Below are positions 349-6,190 of a stretch of 6,622 nucleotides of DNA, piece after piece. The DNA is taken from positions 1 through 6,622 of IMG/VR virus record IMGVR_UViG_3300005859_000094. The stretch is one strand, 5' to 3'. Numbering within the stretch: position 1 is the stretch's first letter; the number at the start of each line of letters is the position of its first letter. A model generated the notes under the pieces. That model was not told the origin of the DNA, did not search any database, and worked only from the letters and a program-made list of their open reading frames with translations. The position numbers were made by a program, and so were the translations under genes.

Positions 349-1656
349 TTAATCACCAAGGTTTGAAAATCTCATGAAATTGTAAATCTGATTACAAATT
401 TCTTCTTTTTGTCTCTGACCGATTTGCAAATCTATATCTAGAGCTTGAAGTAAGATTTGTATGTCAATCGCTTGTTCTTGTCTTCTAGATTCCAAATTAT
501 CACAAACTATATAATTAGTTATATTGTTTATCTTTTGCTGAATTAGATCAATTAGAGCTTTCAAGATTGAGGGATATAGAACTCTAGCATTTATAATTTT
601 ATCATAAGTTTTCTTAATTGCAAGTTGGATAATATGAATTCTATCTAAAATTGCAGAAGTAAAAATTTGATAATTTACTAAATAATCTTCAACATCTGGA
701 TTTCTTAATTTGTTAATTGTCATAGAATATGGATTTCCGGCATAAATTATTGGAATACATTTTTGGATAGTTGAGGATTTTGATTCAGTTCCGGCTCCTC
801 TAGTCCATACACAATTTTCCAGACCGGTTGATAAAGTAGCATTTATCGCACCAAGTTCTTTTGTCGAAAATCCATCTTTCCAATTCTGGATTTCATCAAA
901 TATTAAGCCATTTGACAAAAACACTGCACCATACATATTATTTCTGGCATCATAAACTAGATTTGCATATGTTGGCGGTTCTGTATAATATCGGAAATTG
1001 AAAACTTCTTGCAAAATCATAAATGTTGTAGTTTTCCCAGTTCCACGATTTGAAATTTCTATATAGTTAATTTGACGTTTGGTAATTGGAGATTTAAAAA
1101 GTGGGAATAGACGTGGTAGAAATAGAAATATATCTTCAGTTTCCATTTTCATAACGTCATATCCGAATGCCTGAAATAGAAGAGCATACGTTTGATGTTC
1201 TTGATTTGCTAAGTCAAGAAGTTCTTTAGCAATTTCATAATTGTTCTGTGGTTCTATAGAATAAATATCATGAACATACCAGCCATTCACGCCTTTCCTA
1301 ATTTTGACAAACATATAAGAAGTTATTAAATTATAGAAATCTTCAGGATTATCAGCTATTTGATGAGGGTCAAAACTTCCTATAAATCCGTTTTGAAACT
1401 TAGCAATTACCATGTCATCTTTAACTTTAAAATTAGTAATTTTTGAGATAAATTTTATTTCATTATCAAATAGAAGATAGCTTTGGAAATATTGTTGATC
1501 AATTCCACGTTTGTAAGCTTTTAAAATCTCGATTTTCTTTCTCTCATCAATTTGTTTTCCAGAAAGAATGATGTTGAGAACTCTTTCAGTGTCTCGAGGG
1601 TTGTAAAAAAAAGAATGTTGTTTAACTTTTTCCAAGAACTGAGATGAACTGCTCAT
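349..1656 (-). CDS. AAA+ ATPase / putative helicase, SIRV2 gp18 (ORF436)-like; BrxL/MCM-related ATPase domain
   Basis: 435 aa with Walker A-like SNRGTGKTT, Walker B LIFDE, sensor-1-like YAGN and arginine-finger-like AILDRIH. It lies between the SSB and Cas4-like genes, as in rudiviruses. Confidence 0.88.
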
Positions 1657-2255: not shown

Positions 2256-2543
2256 TTAAATTAAATTAAGGAATATTGATCTTATTATTTTTACCGGTTT
2301 GATATTATATTTTTCTGACAATTTTTGCAATTTTTCATAATATAAATCATCTATTGTAAAAAATACTCTCTCGTCATAATTATCTTGACTTTCTATTATT
2401 CTAAATTCTTTTTCTTCATTTAAGATTTTATCTATCTCTTGTTTTATTTGTTCTCGTTTTTCATAAAAAAGACTTTTATATCTTGAAGGTATACGCAATT
2501 CTATATACTTATTTCTTTGCCTTTTCATAATTTTATATATCAT
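2256..2543 (-). CDS. Ribbon-helix-helix DNA-binding protein, possibly with tandem RHH units
   Basis: The C-terminal ERVFFTIDDLYYEKLQKLSEKYNIKPVKIIRSIF fits the RHH pattern, and the N-terminal KYIELRIP strand-helix looks like a degenerate second unit. ATG at 2543 is preferred over the track's TTG at 2546 because it lies 18 nt from a TGTCA element. Confidence 0.7.
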   Translation of the reverse strand: MIYKIMKRQRNKYIELRIPSRYKSLFYEKREQIKQEIDKILNEEKEFRIIESQDNYDERVFFTIDDLYYEKLQKLSEKYNIKPVKIIRSIFLNLI

Positions 2544-2560
2544 CAACCTTCATTTAAACT

Positions 2561-2582
2561 TGACATATACATTTAAATGTCA
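2561..2582. promoter_or_regulatory. Bidirectional promoter between the RHH gene and Rep
   Basis: TGACATATACATTTAAATGTCA has TGACA and TGTCA at its two ends and a perfect 12-bp palindrome ACATTTAAATGT (2569-2580). Each end is 18 nt from an ATG (2543 on -, 2600 on +). Confidence 0.75.
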
Positions 2583-2599
2583 GGTTTTTATTTTTGTTC

Positions 2600-2947
2600 A
2601 TGGATTGTAAAAAAGTTTTTAGCTATCACTTTCTTTATACTTATACATATTTTGTGACAATAACTACAAATTATCGTTACAATTCCACGATTCCGATTTA
2701 TAAAAAATTTCGGCAATATGTGTATAATCATGACTCATCAGCTCATATTTTTTCAGTTAAGGAATATACAACAAAATTTCACGGTCTTCATTATCATGTC
2801 CTAGTATTTACGAATAAAAAACTTGATTATTCTAGAGTTCACAAACATATGCCTCCGCATTCTGACATACATATTCAATTAGTCCCAAAAACAAAAAAAG
2901 ATATAAAAAAAGTTTTAACTTATATGTTAAAAAATCAAATCATTTAG
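2600..2947 (+). CDS. HUH-superfamily Rep initiator/nickase, SIRV1 ORF119 / SIRV2 gp16-like
   Basis: Motif I-like YFVTIT, HUH motif HGLHYHVLV and catalytic Tyr motif YMLK. ATG at 2600 is preferred over TTG at 2594 on promoter spacing. Confidence 0.9.
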   Translation: MDCKKVFSYHFLYTYTYFVTITTNYRYNSTIPIYKKFRQYVYNHDSSAHIFSVKEYTTKFHGLHYHVLVFTNKKLDYSRVHKHMPPHSDIHIQLVPKTKKDIKKVLTYMLKNQII

Positions 2948-3233
2948 ATTGTTGTTGGGAATTTTGGTTTTGTGAAACTTTTTTCTGAGCTAGATTATTT
3001 ACGTCTGAAAGTGTATCCATATTTAAAAGTGCATTTACGCCAAGAGTAGTTGTAGTTTTAATACTTTCAATTGCTGTAATAATAGCTTTTGTCATCTGAT
3101 CAATTGCATTTTGAAATGCCTCATTTGCTTGCTTTTGATTGTACAAATACACTATTTCACCTACAACATATGAACCTATCAATACGCTCATTAATATTAG
3201 AAATCCTTCTAGAGCTTCTGCAAATATGCTCAT
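2940..3233 (-). CDS. PVAP, virus-associated pyramid egress/lysis protein (SIRV2 P98 / STIV C92 family)
   Basis: 97 aa with an N-terminal TM helix followed by GEIVYLYNQKQANEAFQNAIDQMTK...AIESIK...G(V)NALLNMDTL, closely matching SIRV2 P98 as recalled. Confidence 0.9.
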   Translation of the reverse strand: MSIFAEALEGFLILMSVLIGSYVVGEIVYLYNQKQANEAFQNAIDQMTKAIITAIESIKTTTTLGVNALLNMDTLSDVNNLAQKKVSQNQNSQQQSK

Positions 3234-3331: not shown

Positions 3332-3493
3332 ATGGAGGCACAAACTAAGAAAGAAAAAGTAGTTTTCGGAATAAATATGGACAAAGAGCTAAAGAAGAAA
3401 TTGAAGGCTTATTGTGTTGAGCATGATATAACGATAACTGAAGCTATAGAAACTGCCATAAAAGAATATTTAGAAAAGAGGGGAGTTAAATGA
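3332..3493 (+). CDS. svtR: SvtR-like ribbon-helix-helix transcriptional repressor (53 aa; not in the ORF track)
   Basis: Manual translation MEAQTKKEKVVFGINMDKELKKKLKAYCVEHDITITEAIETAIKEYLEKRGVK. The pattern VFGIxMDKxLK...LKxYC...AIExAIKEYL matches SIRV1 P56b/SvtR as recalled. Confidence 0.85.
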   Translation: MEAQTKKEKVVFGINMDKELKKKLKAYCVEHDITITEAIETAIKEYLEKRGVK

Positions 3494-3682: not shown

Positions 3683-4198
3683 TTATTTAAATTTCGGTAA
3701 AGTAACATTTCTTTGATATTGATATTTTCCGTGATATGGTTTCTCAACTGGAGTTATTGTTTTAGCGAAAATTAGATGTAAAAATCTTTCTCCAACTTTT
3801 AATTTTACTGGAAATTCTGAGCCAACAACTTCAATTGTTAATTCGCCTTTAAATCCCGCATCAACAATAGTAGGCGGTATAGAAATTCCAAGTCTGGCAT
3901 AAGTAGAGCGTAGATTTACAAAAGCCATAACATCATTTGGAAGTTCTATATATTCCAGAGTTGTCATTAAAAGGTGTTCATGTGGTTGAACTATAATCTC
4001 GTTAGAATTTACAATTTCGTAAAAATCTTCTATATTGTCACCAGGCTCAAAAACTTTATCTGTCTTTTTTAATCTAGCAAATTGGTTTCCAATTCTTAAA
4101 TCTATGCCATTTTCCCTAACTATTTCTTCTGAATATGGTACTATTTTTATCCATTCTTTTTCCAGATAATATTTTAAATCTCTATCGCTTAAAATCAT
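3683..4198 (-). CDS. dUTPase / dCTP deaminase family (trimeric dUTPase fold), rudiviral dUTPase-like
   Basis: Motifs [39 protein letters not shown] and PYHGKYQ. Confidence 0.92.
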
Positions 4199-4225
4199 AG
4201 TTTATCGATTTCAAGATTCATTATA

Positions 4226-4238
4226 TGACAAATATATT
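4226..4238 (-). promoter_or_regulatory. TATA-like + TGTCA element for the dUTPase gene
   Basis: - strand AATATATTTGTCA, ending 28 nt before the ATG at 4198. Confidence 0.65.
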
Positions 4239-4250
4239 TTCAATTATTAT

Positions 4251-4481
4251 CTATTTTTTTATTTCTGGAATTTTTTTACATGCATCATCTTCAAAAAATT
4301 CTATATATTCATCGTCCATAGTTCCTAATGGGTCAAAATATTCAATTCTATAACATTTTTCACCACATCTTACATAACAACATCAATCTGTACAATACAT
4401 ATTGTCAAAATCGCATTCATCTTTAATACATGTTCTACATTCATCTTCAATTTTTTGATTTGAATTATCTTGTTTTTCCAT
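4251..4481 (-). pseudogene. Cys-rich acidic 76-codon ORF interrupted by an in-frame TGA at codon 33 (pseudogene, read-through or sequencing error)
   Basis: MEKQDNSNQKIEDECRTCIKDECDFDNMYCTD*CCYVRCGEKCYRIEYFDPLGTMDDEYIEFFEDDACKKIPEIKK(TAG), with the TGA at 4385-4383. It has its own TATA-TGTCA promoter and fills the gap between neighbouring genes. Confidence 0.65.
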
Positions 4482-4501
4482 AATTATTATTTAAAAAAAT
4501 A

Positions 4502-4514
4502 TGACATATATATT
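4502..4514 (-). promoter_or_regulatory. TATA box + TGTCA element for the Cys-rich ORF
   Basis: - strand AATATATATGTCA, ending 21 nt before the ATG at 4481. Confidence 0.7.
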
Positions 4515-4519
4515 TTTGA

Positions 4520-4762
4520 TTATACTTTTCTTTTTAATTTCTTAATTTCTGTTTCAAGTTCATCAATTCTTTCGTAAAGGTCATCAATCATATCTAATAG
4601 CCAAGTTAAAATTATAGCTAAAAAAATTGCTACAATTGCTGAAATTAGATCTATATCTTGTGAATTTTTTGACAAAATCTCTATAGAAAAAATTAAAAAC
4701 AAAGAATATATTGATATTAAAAGAGTTGAAAAAATATACAATAGATAAGTTAATTTATTCAT
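4520..4762 (-). CDS. Small membrane protein: two TM helices plus a C-terminal coiled coil
   Basis: 80 aa with two hydrophobic stretches (about residues 4-30 and 37-56), followed by the heptad-like DDLYERIDELETEIKKLKRKV. Confidence 0.75.
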   Translation of the reverse strand: MNKLTYLLYIFSTLLISIYSLFLIFSIEILSKNSQDIDLISAIVAIFLAIILTWLLDMIDDLYERIDELETEIKKLKRKV

Positions 4763-4789
4763 GATTAATCAGTTTTATTTTTCGTTATC

Positions 4790-4802
4790 TGACAAATAAA
4801 AA
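4790..4802 (-). promoter_or_regulatory. TATA-like + TGTCA element for the membrane protein gene; the T-run may double as terminator of the upstream gene
   Basis: - strand TTTTTATTTGTCA, ending 28 nt before the ATG at 4762. Confidence 0.55.
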
Positions 4803-4826
4803 AAATGAGGATTAAAAAATATTATC

Positions 4827-5609
4827 TTAAACAAGAGTTCTGCATAATGGACATTTATAAGTTCTTTTATATTTTTGTAGATAATAATTTGGGTCTTTCT
4901 GAATATCTCTGAAATATATTTTTTGATGATTATAAAATAGTCCTGAAACATTACCTCCTAGTTCTGTTTCAACATCTACAAATTTCTGAAAGAATTCGGG
5001 ATTCTTTAAAGCAAGTACTGCAAAGTCTGCTGGAGATTTAAACGCAGAACACCAGCATTCGTAAGCTTTGCCGTAAATATCATAAAGCGGATTCTTTTTT
5101 AAACCGTGAATTTTAATGTATTCTTCTACATCTTGTTCTGTAAAGTCATGAATTATTGCATAGCTCATAGCTTTAATTTGTTTGTTATAATAGATTTTCT
5201 GTGTTCTACTTTTTACCCAACTTTCATCTTTTCTAACGCCGGTAACTAATACAATTTCTTCTTTATCTTTTACGAAATCTTTTAAAGGTTTCAGTTTTAG
5301 ATAATATTTACACCATCTCCTTGTAATTGTAGGAAATCCAATTCTTTTTACTAGCTCAAAATAATCATATTTCGGGCCGATAATTGTCAATTCGACTCCT
5401 AATTCTTTACATGTTTCTTTTACATAATCTATAACTCCTGGAGTCGGAATTCCGGTATTTATAAATAATGCTTTCGTTTTTTCTGGGAAAATTGACTTTG
5501 TTAAATGTAGAGCAACTAACGAATCTTTTCCACCGCTGAACATTACATAAATTTCCTTGAAATTCTGTAAATCTTTTTTTGCTTCTTCAATTACTTTTTG
5601 CAGATCCAT
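4827..5609 (-). CDS. PAPS reductase family (CysH/DndC-like) PP-loop adenine nucleotide alpha-hydrolase
   Basis: 260 aa with PP-loop MFSGGKDS, FINTG, RRWCKYYLKLKP, TGVRKDES, a late ECWC and a C-terminal CPLC. Confidence 0.88.
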   Translation of the reverse strand: MDLQKVIEEAKKDLQNFKEIYVMFSGGKDSLVALHLTKSIFPEKTKALFINTGIPTPGVIDYVKETCKELGVELTIIGPKYDYFELVKRIGFPTITRRWCKYYLKLKPLKDFVKDKEEIVLVTGVRKDESWVKSRTQKIYYNKQIKAMSYAIIHDFTEQDVEEYIKIHGLKKNPLYDIYGKAYECWCSAFKSPADFAVLALKNPEFFQKFVDVETELGGNVSGLFYNHQKIYFRDIQKDPNYYLQKYKRTYKCPLCRTLV

Positions 5610-5629: not shown

Positions 5630-5642
5630 TGACAAATATTAA
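5630..5642 (-). promoter_or_regulatory. TATA-like + TGTCA element for the PP-loop enzyme gene
   Basis: - strand TTAATATTTGTCA, ending 21 nt before the ATG at 5609. It overlaps the stop codon of the upstream ORF. Confidence 0.65.
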
Positions 5643-6043: not shown

Positions 6044-6190
6044 ACAATTCATATTCATAATATTTTGAATATTGCTTTTTTTCTTACTTGTGAAACAAAA
6101 TTGACAATTAATATTCTTTATATTTTGAATATGAGTTTGAGTTTGATTTTTTTGTCAATTTTAACAATTAATATTCATCATATTTTGAAT
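6044..6190. repeat. Three imperfect 27-bp direct repeats at an exact 60-bp period, separated by unique 33-bp spacers
   Basis: acaattcatattcataatattttgaat (6044-6070), acaattaatattctttatattttgaat (6104-6130) and acaattaatattcatcatattttgaat (6164-6190). Confidence 0.85.

What the first reader, a model, noticed from the sequence alone, without database searches (positions are those of the whole stretch)
4251..4481. Hidden Cys-rich ORF with an in-frame UGA at a CxxC position
Seen: 76 codons with 9 Cys and many Asp/Glu, a promoter at the short-class spacing, and a single TGA in the context C-T-D-[TGA]-C-C. The frame stays open for 43 more codons of the same composition and ends just before the dUTPase promoter. 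Decoding the TGA as Cys would complete a second CxxC. Inference: a recent nonsense mutation or sequencing error is most likely. Programmed read-through giving 32-aa and 76-aa products is possible. Selenocysteine is unlikely because Sulfolobales are not known to encode Sec machinery. The product could be a metal or Fe-S binder partnering the nearby PP-loop enzyme, or an acidic DNA-mimic anti-defence protein.
Basis: partly seen in the sequence, partly recalled or inferred. Interest (0 to 1): 0.65.

Follow-up and report, generated by a model that had tools for sequence, protein, structure and literature searches.

The report
Nonsense allele in rudivirus accessory gene
The in-frame TGA is a tryptophan codon (TGG) changed by one base into a stop in one strain of an uncultured Yellowstone hot-spring rudivirus, so it is an ordinary knockout allele of a small, conserved, cysteine-rich accessory gene that is intact in every other known copy, not a recoding signal.

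Summary
On the minus strand, 4481->4251 is a 76-codon, acidic frame with 9 Cys, its own rudiviral TATA+GTC promoter, and one TGA at codon 33 (4383-4385). The window is contig Ga0080003_1003245, a Usarudivirus-like fragment from Joseph's Coat hot spring, Yellowstone.

The ORF belongs to a small unannotated family. I found 12 distinct intact members, all from hot-spring metagenomes and none from an isolated virus. The family is under purifying selection on both sides of the stop.

In all 11 homologues with DNA in hand the aligned codon is TGG (Trp, context D-W-C-C). The most distant member has Gly there. None has Cys, so no second CxxC exists.

TGA ends two other genes in the window. No tRNA, Rfam family or RNA structure accompanies the stop.

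The same TGA haplotype also appears in a contig of a second JGI metagenome, so a base-calling error is unlikely. Three intact alleles coexist in the window's own metagenome.

Best reading: a recent TGG->TGA nonsense allele segregating in the virus population. Low-level read-through by tRNA-Trp is possible but unsupported. The gene's function is unknown. It is linked to dUTPase, not to the PP-loop gene.

The parts
4251..4481 (-). Interrupted 76-codon CDS of a small acidic Cys-rich rudiviral accessory protein (includes the TAG stop at 4251-4253)
   Evidence: Translation; 12 distinct intact homologues of 64-76 aa; purifying selection in both halves
4383..4385 (-). In-frame TGA at codon 33. It is TGG (Trp) in all 11 homologues with DNA, so the change is a single G>A on the coding strand
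   Evidence: In the Logan contigs of run X1, all 3 contigs covering 4383 read C on the + strand, which is TGG
4386..4481 (-). The 32-codon N-terminal piece, the only product expected under standard decoding. It covers the predicted helix with the CxxC and the first beta-strand
   Evidence: JGI called this 32-aa gene on only two contigs on record
4254..4382 (-). 43 codons downstream of the stop, still open. They encode the most conserved part of the family (the CC-Y-x2-C and YRIEYFDPLGT-DDEYIE core)
   Evidence: There are only 2 private synonymous and 2 private non-synonymous codons, the latter both in the variable tail
4502..4512 (-). The gene's own promoter element (TATA-like box followed by GTC), 20 nt upstream of the ATG. 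It is conserved upstream of all homologues
   Evidence: The GTC element of SIRV1/2 promoters is described in PMC5569661, citing Kessler 2004
4226..4236 (-). Promoter element of the downstream dUTPase gene, just after the TAG of the Cys-rich gene
3683..4198 (-). dCTP deaminase/dUTPase gene, the constant downstream neighbour of the family
   Evidence: Pfam DCD 7.7e-30 and dUTPase 4.8e-8; adjacent in 10 of 13 loci, and one gene away in the other 3
4520..4762 (-). 80-aa gene (phrog_9310, probably a membrane protein). It lies upstream here, but sits between the Cys-rich gene and dUTPase in three relatives

Best explanation
The ORF is a real, separately transcribed accessory gene of an uncultured Usarudivirus-like rudivirus. 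In other strains it makes a 64-76 aa acidic protein. That protein is predicted, at moderate confidence, to be an N-terminal helix packed on a four-stranded antiparallel sheet, with five invariant cysteines that probably stabilise the fold through disulfides or a metal site (inferred). In the haplotype carried by this window, a single G>A transition turned the invariant Trp33 codon TGG into TGA. Under standard decoding the product ends after 32 residues and lacks the whole conserved core, so this is a null or strongly hypomorphic allele of a dispensable gene. It segregates alongside intact alleles in the same hot-spring virus population. The downstream frame is still clean because the mutation is young. 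Shown: the gene is real, the ancestral codon is TGG, TGA is a normal stop in this virus, the allele occurs on two contigs, and the gene is dispensable. Inferred: loss of function, the recent origin of the mutation, and the role of the cysteines.
For: (1) Eleven distinct homologues with DNA all carry TGG at the aligned codon, in the context GAY-TGG-TGT-TGT. Trp33 is invariant in alignment A2. The one more distant member, P0005, has Gly there and not Cys. (2) Purifying selection: omega is 0.01-0.14 for codons 1-32 and 0.08-0.30 for codons 34-67 among the CxxC-bearing members. (3) TGA is the normal stop of two other window genes, 2940-3233(-) and 3332-3493(+). There is no tRNA and no Rfam family. 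The RNA after the stop is no more stable than shuffled sequence (z = +0.78). (4) The same TGA appears in JGI20128J18817_1017926 (metagenome 3300001684). That contig is 100% identical to window 3693-4678 but has 27 differences in 4679-4915, so the allele is found in two assemblies with different right flanks. (5) The window's own metagenome (Ga0080003) holds three other contigs with intact TGG alleles. (6) The gene is dispensable. It is absent from SIRV7, SIRV9 and all 50,697 phage records. One contig of run X1 joins 4198 to 4499, skipping the whole promoter-plus-ORF cassette. (7) It has its own TATA+GTC promoter, conserved in the homologues.
Against: No raw reads could be inspected. The one public run found is kept only as Logan contigs, and these carry other haplotypes across 4361-4413. 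They therefore show TGG alleles but neither confirm nor refute the TGA. The two TGA contigs are identical over the ORF, and the two JGI data sets may derive from the same spring or even the same DNA, so they are not proven to be independent. The 43 downstream codons carry no further lesion. The window-private changes there (2 synonymous and 2 non-synonymous codons) are too few to tell 'very recent' from 'still translated'.
Confidence: 0.77

Rival explanations
1. Sequencing or assembly error: the virus really has TGG and the contig's A is an artefact.
For: It is a single-base difference from all homologues. All 3 Logan contigs of run X1 that cover 4383 read TGG. The downstream frame is perfectly intact.
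Against: The identical TGA is present in a contig of a second JGI metagenome assembly, whose right flank differs at 27 positions. The X1 contigs over the site belong to other haplotypes: they also differ from the window at 4361, 4370, 4371, 4390, 4404 and 4413, so they say nothing about this haplotype. Consensus substitution errors are rare in Illumina metagenome contigs (general knowledge).
Confidence: 0.1
2. Leaky or programmed read-through: UGA is read at a useful rate by near-cognate tRNA-Trp in the Sulfolobales host. This would restore the wild-type Trp and give a 32-aa and a 76-aa product, so the allele would be a tolerated, lower-dose version of the gene.
For: The ancestral residue is exactly the one that near-cognate decoding of UGA inserts (established for bacteria and eukaryotes; my knowledge). 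The downstream frame is intact, with only conservative or tail changes. The allele is seen on two contigs with different flanks.
Against: The stop is not conserved: 11 of 11 other DNA sequences have TGG. There is no stimulatory RNA structure. TGA ends two other genes in the window. In Archaea, read-through has been demonstrated only for Sec and Pyl (PMC8211752). The observations fit a young null allele equally well.
Confidence: 0.08
3. Selenocysteine or Cys recoding at a CxxC redox or metal site.
For: Only the local look of the sequence: C-x-x-[TGA] next to CC.
Against: Homologues have Trp there, never Cys, and Gly in the most distant member. There is no SECIS-like structure, no Rfam hit and no tRNA. 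Sec machinery is not known in Sulfolobales (general knowledge; not tested here).
Confidence: 0.01
4. Not a gene at all: a chance open frame in AT-rich intergenic DNA.
For: The ORF is short, matches no Pfam or PHROG family, and is absent from isolated rudiviruses.
Against: There are 12 intact homologues with omega far below 1, a conserved private promoter, a conserved position upstream of dUTPase, and a moderately confident fold (pLDDT 72).
Confidence: 0.01

Closest known systems
Nonsense (pseudogenised) alleles of dispensable accessory genes in virus populations
   Same: A single-base change from a sense codon that every relative conserves. It is confined to one haplotype. The gene shows presence/absence polymorphism among strains, and intact alleles coexist in the same sample.
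   Different: No further decay is visible yet. The allele occurs with two different right flanks, so it has circulated at least briefly, or one of the assemblies is chimeric.
UGA-Sec selenoprotein genes of Archaea (Methanococcales and relatives)
   Same: An in-frame UGA next to cysteines in a small Cys-rich protein.
   Different: The homologous residue is Trp, not Cys or Sec. There is no SECIS-like element. The host lineage is not known to have Sec machinery. The stop is not conserved.
Small cysteine-rich proteins of hyperthermophilic crenarchaeal viruses, thought to be stabilised by intracellular disulfides (literature recalled from memory, not checked here)
   Same: A small protein of a Sulfolobales virus with many conserved Cys placed on neighbouring beta-strands.
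   Different: There is no sequence or confident fold relationship to any characterised example. Disulfide versus metal binding was not tested.
Bacterial SH3b (Pfam SH3_3) repeats
   Same: The family profile's positions 35-63 (W/C-Y-R-I-E-Y ... G ... D-E-Y-I-E) match the last two strands of many SH3_3 repeats in two bacterial cell-wall proteins.
   Different: Each single repeat scores only 1-11 bits. Pfam SH3_3 does not match the family even at E <= 1. The model is helix plus sheet, not an SH3 barrel. This is a motif-level resemblance only.
Small acidic anti-defence proteins of rudiviruses (for example Acr proteins of SIRV2/SIRV3; recalled from memory)
   Same: Small, acidic, individually promoted, and variably present among strains.
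   Different: There is no sequence match to any isolated rudivirus genome, including those that encode the known Acrs. The gene sits next to dUTPase in the conserved core, not in the variable genome ends. No functional evidence.

Membership tests
Simple nonsense allele / incipient pseudogene | Homologues carry a sense codon at the aligned position, one base away from the stop | tested here: met
   TGG in 11 of 11 distinct homologues with DNA
Simple nonsense allele / incipient pseudogene | The stop is restricted to one lineage, with intact alleles elsewhere in the population | tested here: met
   Only 2 contigs on record encode the 32-aa product, and both carry the same haplotype. There are 3 intact alleles in the same metagenome
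Simple nonsense allele / incipient pseudogene | The stop is present in the underlying reads (not an artefact) | tested here: inconclusive
   Only Logan contigs of one run were available, and they carry other haplotypes at the site. The second assembly with the same TGA gives indirect support
Simple nonsense allele / incipient pseudogene | Relaxed constraint downstream of the stop on that lineage | tested here: inconclusive
   2 synonymous and 2 non-synonymous private codons. Window vs L008, codons 34-76: omega 0.21 from 5 S and 5 N. Too few changes to decide
Selenoprotein gene | UGA aligns with Cys or Sec in homologues | tested here: not met
   It aligns with Trp (11 sequences) or Gly (1)
Selenoprotein gene | SECIS element on the mRNA | tested here: not met
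   No Rfam family in the window. The 111 nt from the stop onwards fold no better than shuffles. The 3' UTR is only about 14 nt long before the next promoter
Selenoprotein gene | Host encodes tRNA-Sec, SelB and the rest of the Sec machinery | not testable with these tools
   The host genome is not identified. The window encodes no tRNA
Programmed stop-codon read-through | The stop codon is conserved among homologues | tested here: not met
Programmed stop-codon read-through | A stimulatory context or RNA structure 3' of the stop | tested here: not met
   z = +0.78 against shuffles
Programmed stop-codon read-through | Two protein products detected | not testable with these tools
   No proteomic or RNA data are available for this virus
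Genome-wide TGA reassignment (TGA = Trp) | TGA is not used as a terminator, and in-frame TGAs occur in many genes | tested here: not met
   Two window genes end in TGA. All other window genes are intact under table 11
Rudiviral protein-coding gene with its own promoter | TATA-like box followed by GTC, about 20-30 nt upstream of the start codon | tested here: met
   TATATATGTCA at 4512-4502. The motif is enriched (5 found vs 0.66 expected) and conserved in homologues. Literature: PMC5569661
CxxC zinc-finger / Fe-S type metal binder | Paired, conserved CxxC (or equivalent four-ligand) motifs and a match to a known family | tested here: not met
   The only CxxC (C15, C18) is absent from L015, L006, L020 and P0005. 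The supposed second CxxC is C-x-x-W. No Pfam, PHROG or PDB match. The five invariant Cys (23, 30, 34, 35, 39) could still bind a metal or form disulfides; this was not tested
Bacterial SH3b (SH3_3) | Pfam SH3_3 match above the gathering score, and an SH3 barrel fold | tested here: not met
   No SH3_3 hit at E <= 1. The model is a helix plus a 4-stranded sheet. Only motif-level hits to repeat proteins

The most novel reading that the evidence does not exclude
The TGA allele is not dead. At host growth temperature, UGA in this context would be misread by tRNA-Trp often enough to give some wild-type full-length protein, so the allele persists and recombines in the population as a low-dose version of the gene. 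This would be the first stop-codon read-through in a crenarchaeal system that does not involve Sec or Pyl.
Probability: 0.06. Interest if true: 0.6.

Novelty: new member of a known kind. Interest (0 to 1): 0.17.

Why it matters
The result mainly removes a false lead: there is no selenocysteine, no Cys recoding and no hidden CxxC site. It also adds three modest findings. First, a previously unannotated, metagenome-only family of small acidic Cys-rich rudivirus proteins is tightly linked to the viral dUTPase gene. Second, a knockout allele, intact alleles and a cassette-less variant of one accessory gene appear to coexist in Yellowstone hot-spring rudiviruses. Third, this natural TGG/TGA allele pair could serve as a ready-made test of UGA leakiness in Sulfolobales.

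Tried and rejected
- blastn and tblastn of the ORF, of its two halves and of an intact homologue against 50,697 phage and archaeal-virus records found no true match.
- Pfam and PHROGs gave no family for three members.
- A PDB sequence-profile search gave only noise, Cdc37 at E = 0.15.
- The ESM Atlas feature search gave no usable hit.
- The AlphaFold2 model (pLDDT 72) was searched by Foldseek against PDB and BFVD, with nothing at E <= 0.001.
- VIA-align gave a best Z of 6.2 to generic helix-on-sheet folds (VirB8/NTF2/cystatin-like). That is below the tool's stated noise level of 7-8.
- The Atlas shape search returned unrelated DUFs.
- The exhaustive profile search of 1.84 billion representatives added only one true member, plus SH3b-repeat proteins at motif level.
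- An exact 22-mer spanning the TGA was not found in IMG/VR.
- No alternative genetic code was used. The stop was read as X only, to make a search query.
- Termination-reinitiation at the overlapping TGATG was considered and rejected: that ATG is out of frame and opens only a 7-codon frame (read).
- Partnership with the PP-loop/PAPS-reductase gene was rejected on co-occurrence, 3 of 13 loci.
- Paper searches for the two IMG metagenome numbers found nothing.

Full report
**What is in the sequence.**
- On the minus strand, window 4481->4251 reads as 76 codons and a TAG stop, interrupted once by TGA at codon 33 (+ strand TCA at 4383-4385), in the context C-T-D-[TGA]-C-C.
- The frame has 9 Cys, 21 Asp+Glu against 11 Lys+Arg, and a pI of about 4.3.
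- Forty-three open codons follow the stop. Base composition alone predicts P = 0.017 for that. Empirically, 4.3% of all stops in the window's six frames are followed by that many open codons.

**Where the window comes from.**
- The window is a 6,622-base IMG/VR record, identical to JGI contig Ga0080003_1003245 of metagenome 3300005859.
- Ga0080003 is listed as Joseph's Coat hot spring, Yellowstone, 74 C, pH 2.5, in PMC7689252 Table 1.
- It is about 78% identical in DNA to the North American Sulfolobus islandicus rod-shaped viruses SIRV5-11, genus Usarudivirus.
- Gene order matches those viruses: Cas4-like gene, BrxL/Lon-like ATPase ('protease'), pyramid protein, two RHH regulators, dCTP deaminase/dUTPase, and so on.
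- The Cys-rich ORF lies between dUTPase (3683-4198, minus) and an 80-aa gene (4520-4762, minus).
- SIRV7 goes straight from dUTPase to the next small gene. SIRV9 lacks both dUTPase and this ORF.

**It is a real gene.**
- Searches of IMG/VR, JGI metagenome contigs, the 5.8-billion-protein word index and the 1.84-billion-representative profile library recovered 12 distinct intact relatives of 64-76 aa.
- All come from hot-spring metagenomes. No isolated virus encodes the gene.
- Among the closer members, pairwise Nei-Gojobori omega is 0.01-0.14 for codons 1-32 and 0.08-0.30 for codons 34-67. Both halves are therefore protein-coding and constrained.
- Every copy is preceded by the same promoter element, a TATA-like box followed by GTC. 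Here it is TATATATGTCA at 4512-4502, ending 20 nt before the ATG.
- The element occurs 5 times in the window against 0.66 expected. The GTC element is a described feature of SIRV1/2 promoters (PMC5569661 citing Kessler 2004).

**What the TGA is.**
- In all 11 homologues for which I hold DNA, the aligned codon is TGG, in the context GAY-TGG-TGT-TGT. Trp33 is an invariant column of alignment A2.
- The single more distant member (P0005, protein only) has Gly there. No member has Cys.
- The window therefore differs by one G>A transition from a conserved Trp codon. The 'second CxxC' would be an artefact of reading the stop as Cys.
- The N-terminal CxxC is not a family feature either: it is missing from L015, L006/L007, L020 and P0005. 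The invariant cysteines are C23, C30, C34, C35 and C39.

**No sign of recoding.**
- TGA terminates two other genes of the window, 2940-3233 (minus) and 3332-3493 (plus). All other genes are intact under table 11.
- The window encodes no tRNA and matches no Rfam family.
- The 111 nt of mRNA starting just upstream of the stop fold no better than shuffled sequence (z = +0.78).
- A review of archaeal recoding states that read-through has been shown only for Sec and Pyl, besides -1 frameshifting (PMC8211752).
- The overlapping TGATG offers only an out-of-frame 7-codon restart (read).

**Error or allele?**
The one public run that holds the window (71% of sampled words) is kept as Logan contigs.
- Across 4361-4413 these contigs belong to other haplotypes. 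All three contigs covering 4383 read C, which is TGG, but they also differ from the window at 4361, 4370, 4371, 4390, 4404 and 4413. They show intact alleles in that sample and say nothing about this haplotype.
- Independent support for the TGA comes from contig JGI20128J18817_1017926 of a second JGI metagenome (3300001684). It has the same TGA and the same 76-codon frame.
- That contig is 100% identical to window 3693-4678 but differs at 27 positions in 4679-4915. The allele therefore appears in two assemblies joined to different right flanks, through recombination or a chimeric assembly.
- These two contigs are the only places on record that encode the exact 32-aa N-terminal product. I could not establish whether the two data sets are independent samples.
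- Three other contigs of the window's own metagenome carry intact TGG alleles.
- A contig in run X1 joins 4198 directly to 4499 with 24 other letters, so it lacks the whole promoter-plus-ORF cassette. A cassette-less variant therefore circulates in hot-spring rudiviruses as well, alongside the knockout and intact alleles seen in the window's metagenome.

**Age of the mutation.** Downstream of the stop, the window's private changes are two synonymous codons (37, 41) and two non-synonymous ones (69, 74), the latter both in the variable C-terminal tail. There are no indels and no further stops. This fits a young mutation, but the counts are too small to exclude continued translation.

**What the protein might be.**
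- AlphaFold2 with the 11-sequence alignment gives a moderately confident model (pLDDT 72, pTM 0.56): helix 2-18, then strands 23-31, 34-39, 42-49 and 59-64, and a short helix. Trp33 sits in the first hairpin turn.
- No search gave a meaningful relative. Foldseek PDB and BFVD found nothing at E <= 0.001. VIA-align reached Z <= 6.2 to generic helix-on-sheet folds, below the tool's noise level. The Atlas shape and feature searches gave nothing coherent. The PDB profile search gave noise. Pfam and PHROGs were blank.
- The profile search did pull two bacterial SH3b-repeat wall proteins, through a W-Y-[KR]-[IV]-x-Y...G...[DE]-Y-[IV] motif repeated in them. This is a motif-level resemblance, not membership.
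- Function therefore remains unknown. My working guess (inference) is a small, disulfide- or metal-stabilised binding protein acting with or near the viral dUTPase step, or on a host factor.

**Context.**
- The gene lies directly upstream of dUTPase and in the same direction in 10 of 13 loci. In the other three the 80-aa gene sits between them, so the two small cassettes have swapped order.
- The PAPS-reductase-like PP-loop gene (4827-5609) accompanies it in only 3 of 13 loci. The proposed partnership is not supported.

**Verdict.**
- This is a real, previously unannotated small rudiviral gene carrying an ordinary TGG->TGA nonsense allele (probability about 0.77).
- An assembly error (about 0.10) and tolerated read-through by tRNA-Trp (about 0.08) remain possible. 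Sec or Cys recoding is excluded for practical purposes.
- Interest is low. The residual value lies in the orphan family and in the natural TGG/TGA allele pair as a probe of UGA leakiness in Sulfolobales.

Noticed in passing
window 4827-5609 (-): A 260-aa PAPS-reductase-like PP-loop gene (Pfam PF01507 1.6e-24; phrog_424 1.1e-47). It is present in only 3 of 13 related loci (window, L012, L014) and absent from SIRV7 and SIRV9. It looks like an accessory metabolic or modification gene cassette with its own TATA+GTC promoter at the short (20-nt) spacing.
   Followed up: partly
window 4198-4499; run X1 contig (tables 5 and 5c): A contig in the public run joins 4198 to 4499 with 24 unrelated letters between. 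This is a co-circulating virus variant lacking the whole Cys-rich gene cassette, as in SIRV7.
   Followed up: partly
L005 2831-3338, L017 2492-3002, L009 750-1260 versus window 4251-4762: The order of the Cys-rich gene and the 80-aa phrog_9310 gene is swapped in three relatives. Each small gene seems to move as a promoter-plus-ORF cassette.
   Followed up: partly
window 4679-4915 versus L014 1-257: The second TGA contig is 100% identical to the window over 986 bases, then differs at 27 positions within 240 bases. Several of these variants (4805, 4806, 4824, 4825, 4911, 4915) are the ones seen in the run X1 contigs. This is either a recombination breakpoint near 4679 or a chimeric assembly.
   Followed up: partly
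window 4226-4236, 4502-4512, 4790-4800, 5630-5640 (-), 6147-6157 (+): A TATA-like box plus GTCA element lies upstream of most genes, at two spacings to the ATG: 20 nt (Cys-rich gene, PAPS reductase) and 27 nt (dUTPase, orf80). The short class would give essentially leaderless mRNAs (inference).
   Followed up: partly
window 2546-2594: The divergent intergenic region between 2256-2546 (-) and 2594-2947 (+) contains a near-palindrome with GTC/GAC elements facing both ways (TGACATATACATTTAAATGTCA). It is probably a pair of back-to-back promoters or a regulator site.
   Followed up: no
window 349-1656 (-): The 435-aa gene annotated 'protease' in SIRV records carries a precomputed Pfam BrxL_ATPase (PF13337) hit in the JGI gene table. 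This is a Lon/BrxL-like ATPase next to the Cas4-like gene.
   Followed up: no
window 4775-4951 (-): A 58-codon ORF overlaps the 3' end of the PAPS-reductase gene in another frame. JGI did not call it and it has no family match. It is probably spurious.
   Followed up: no
family alignment A2, columns 35-63; P0006, P0007: The conserved C-terminal core of the family resembles the last two strands of bacterial SH3b (SH3_3) repeats at motif level.
   Followed up: partly
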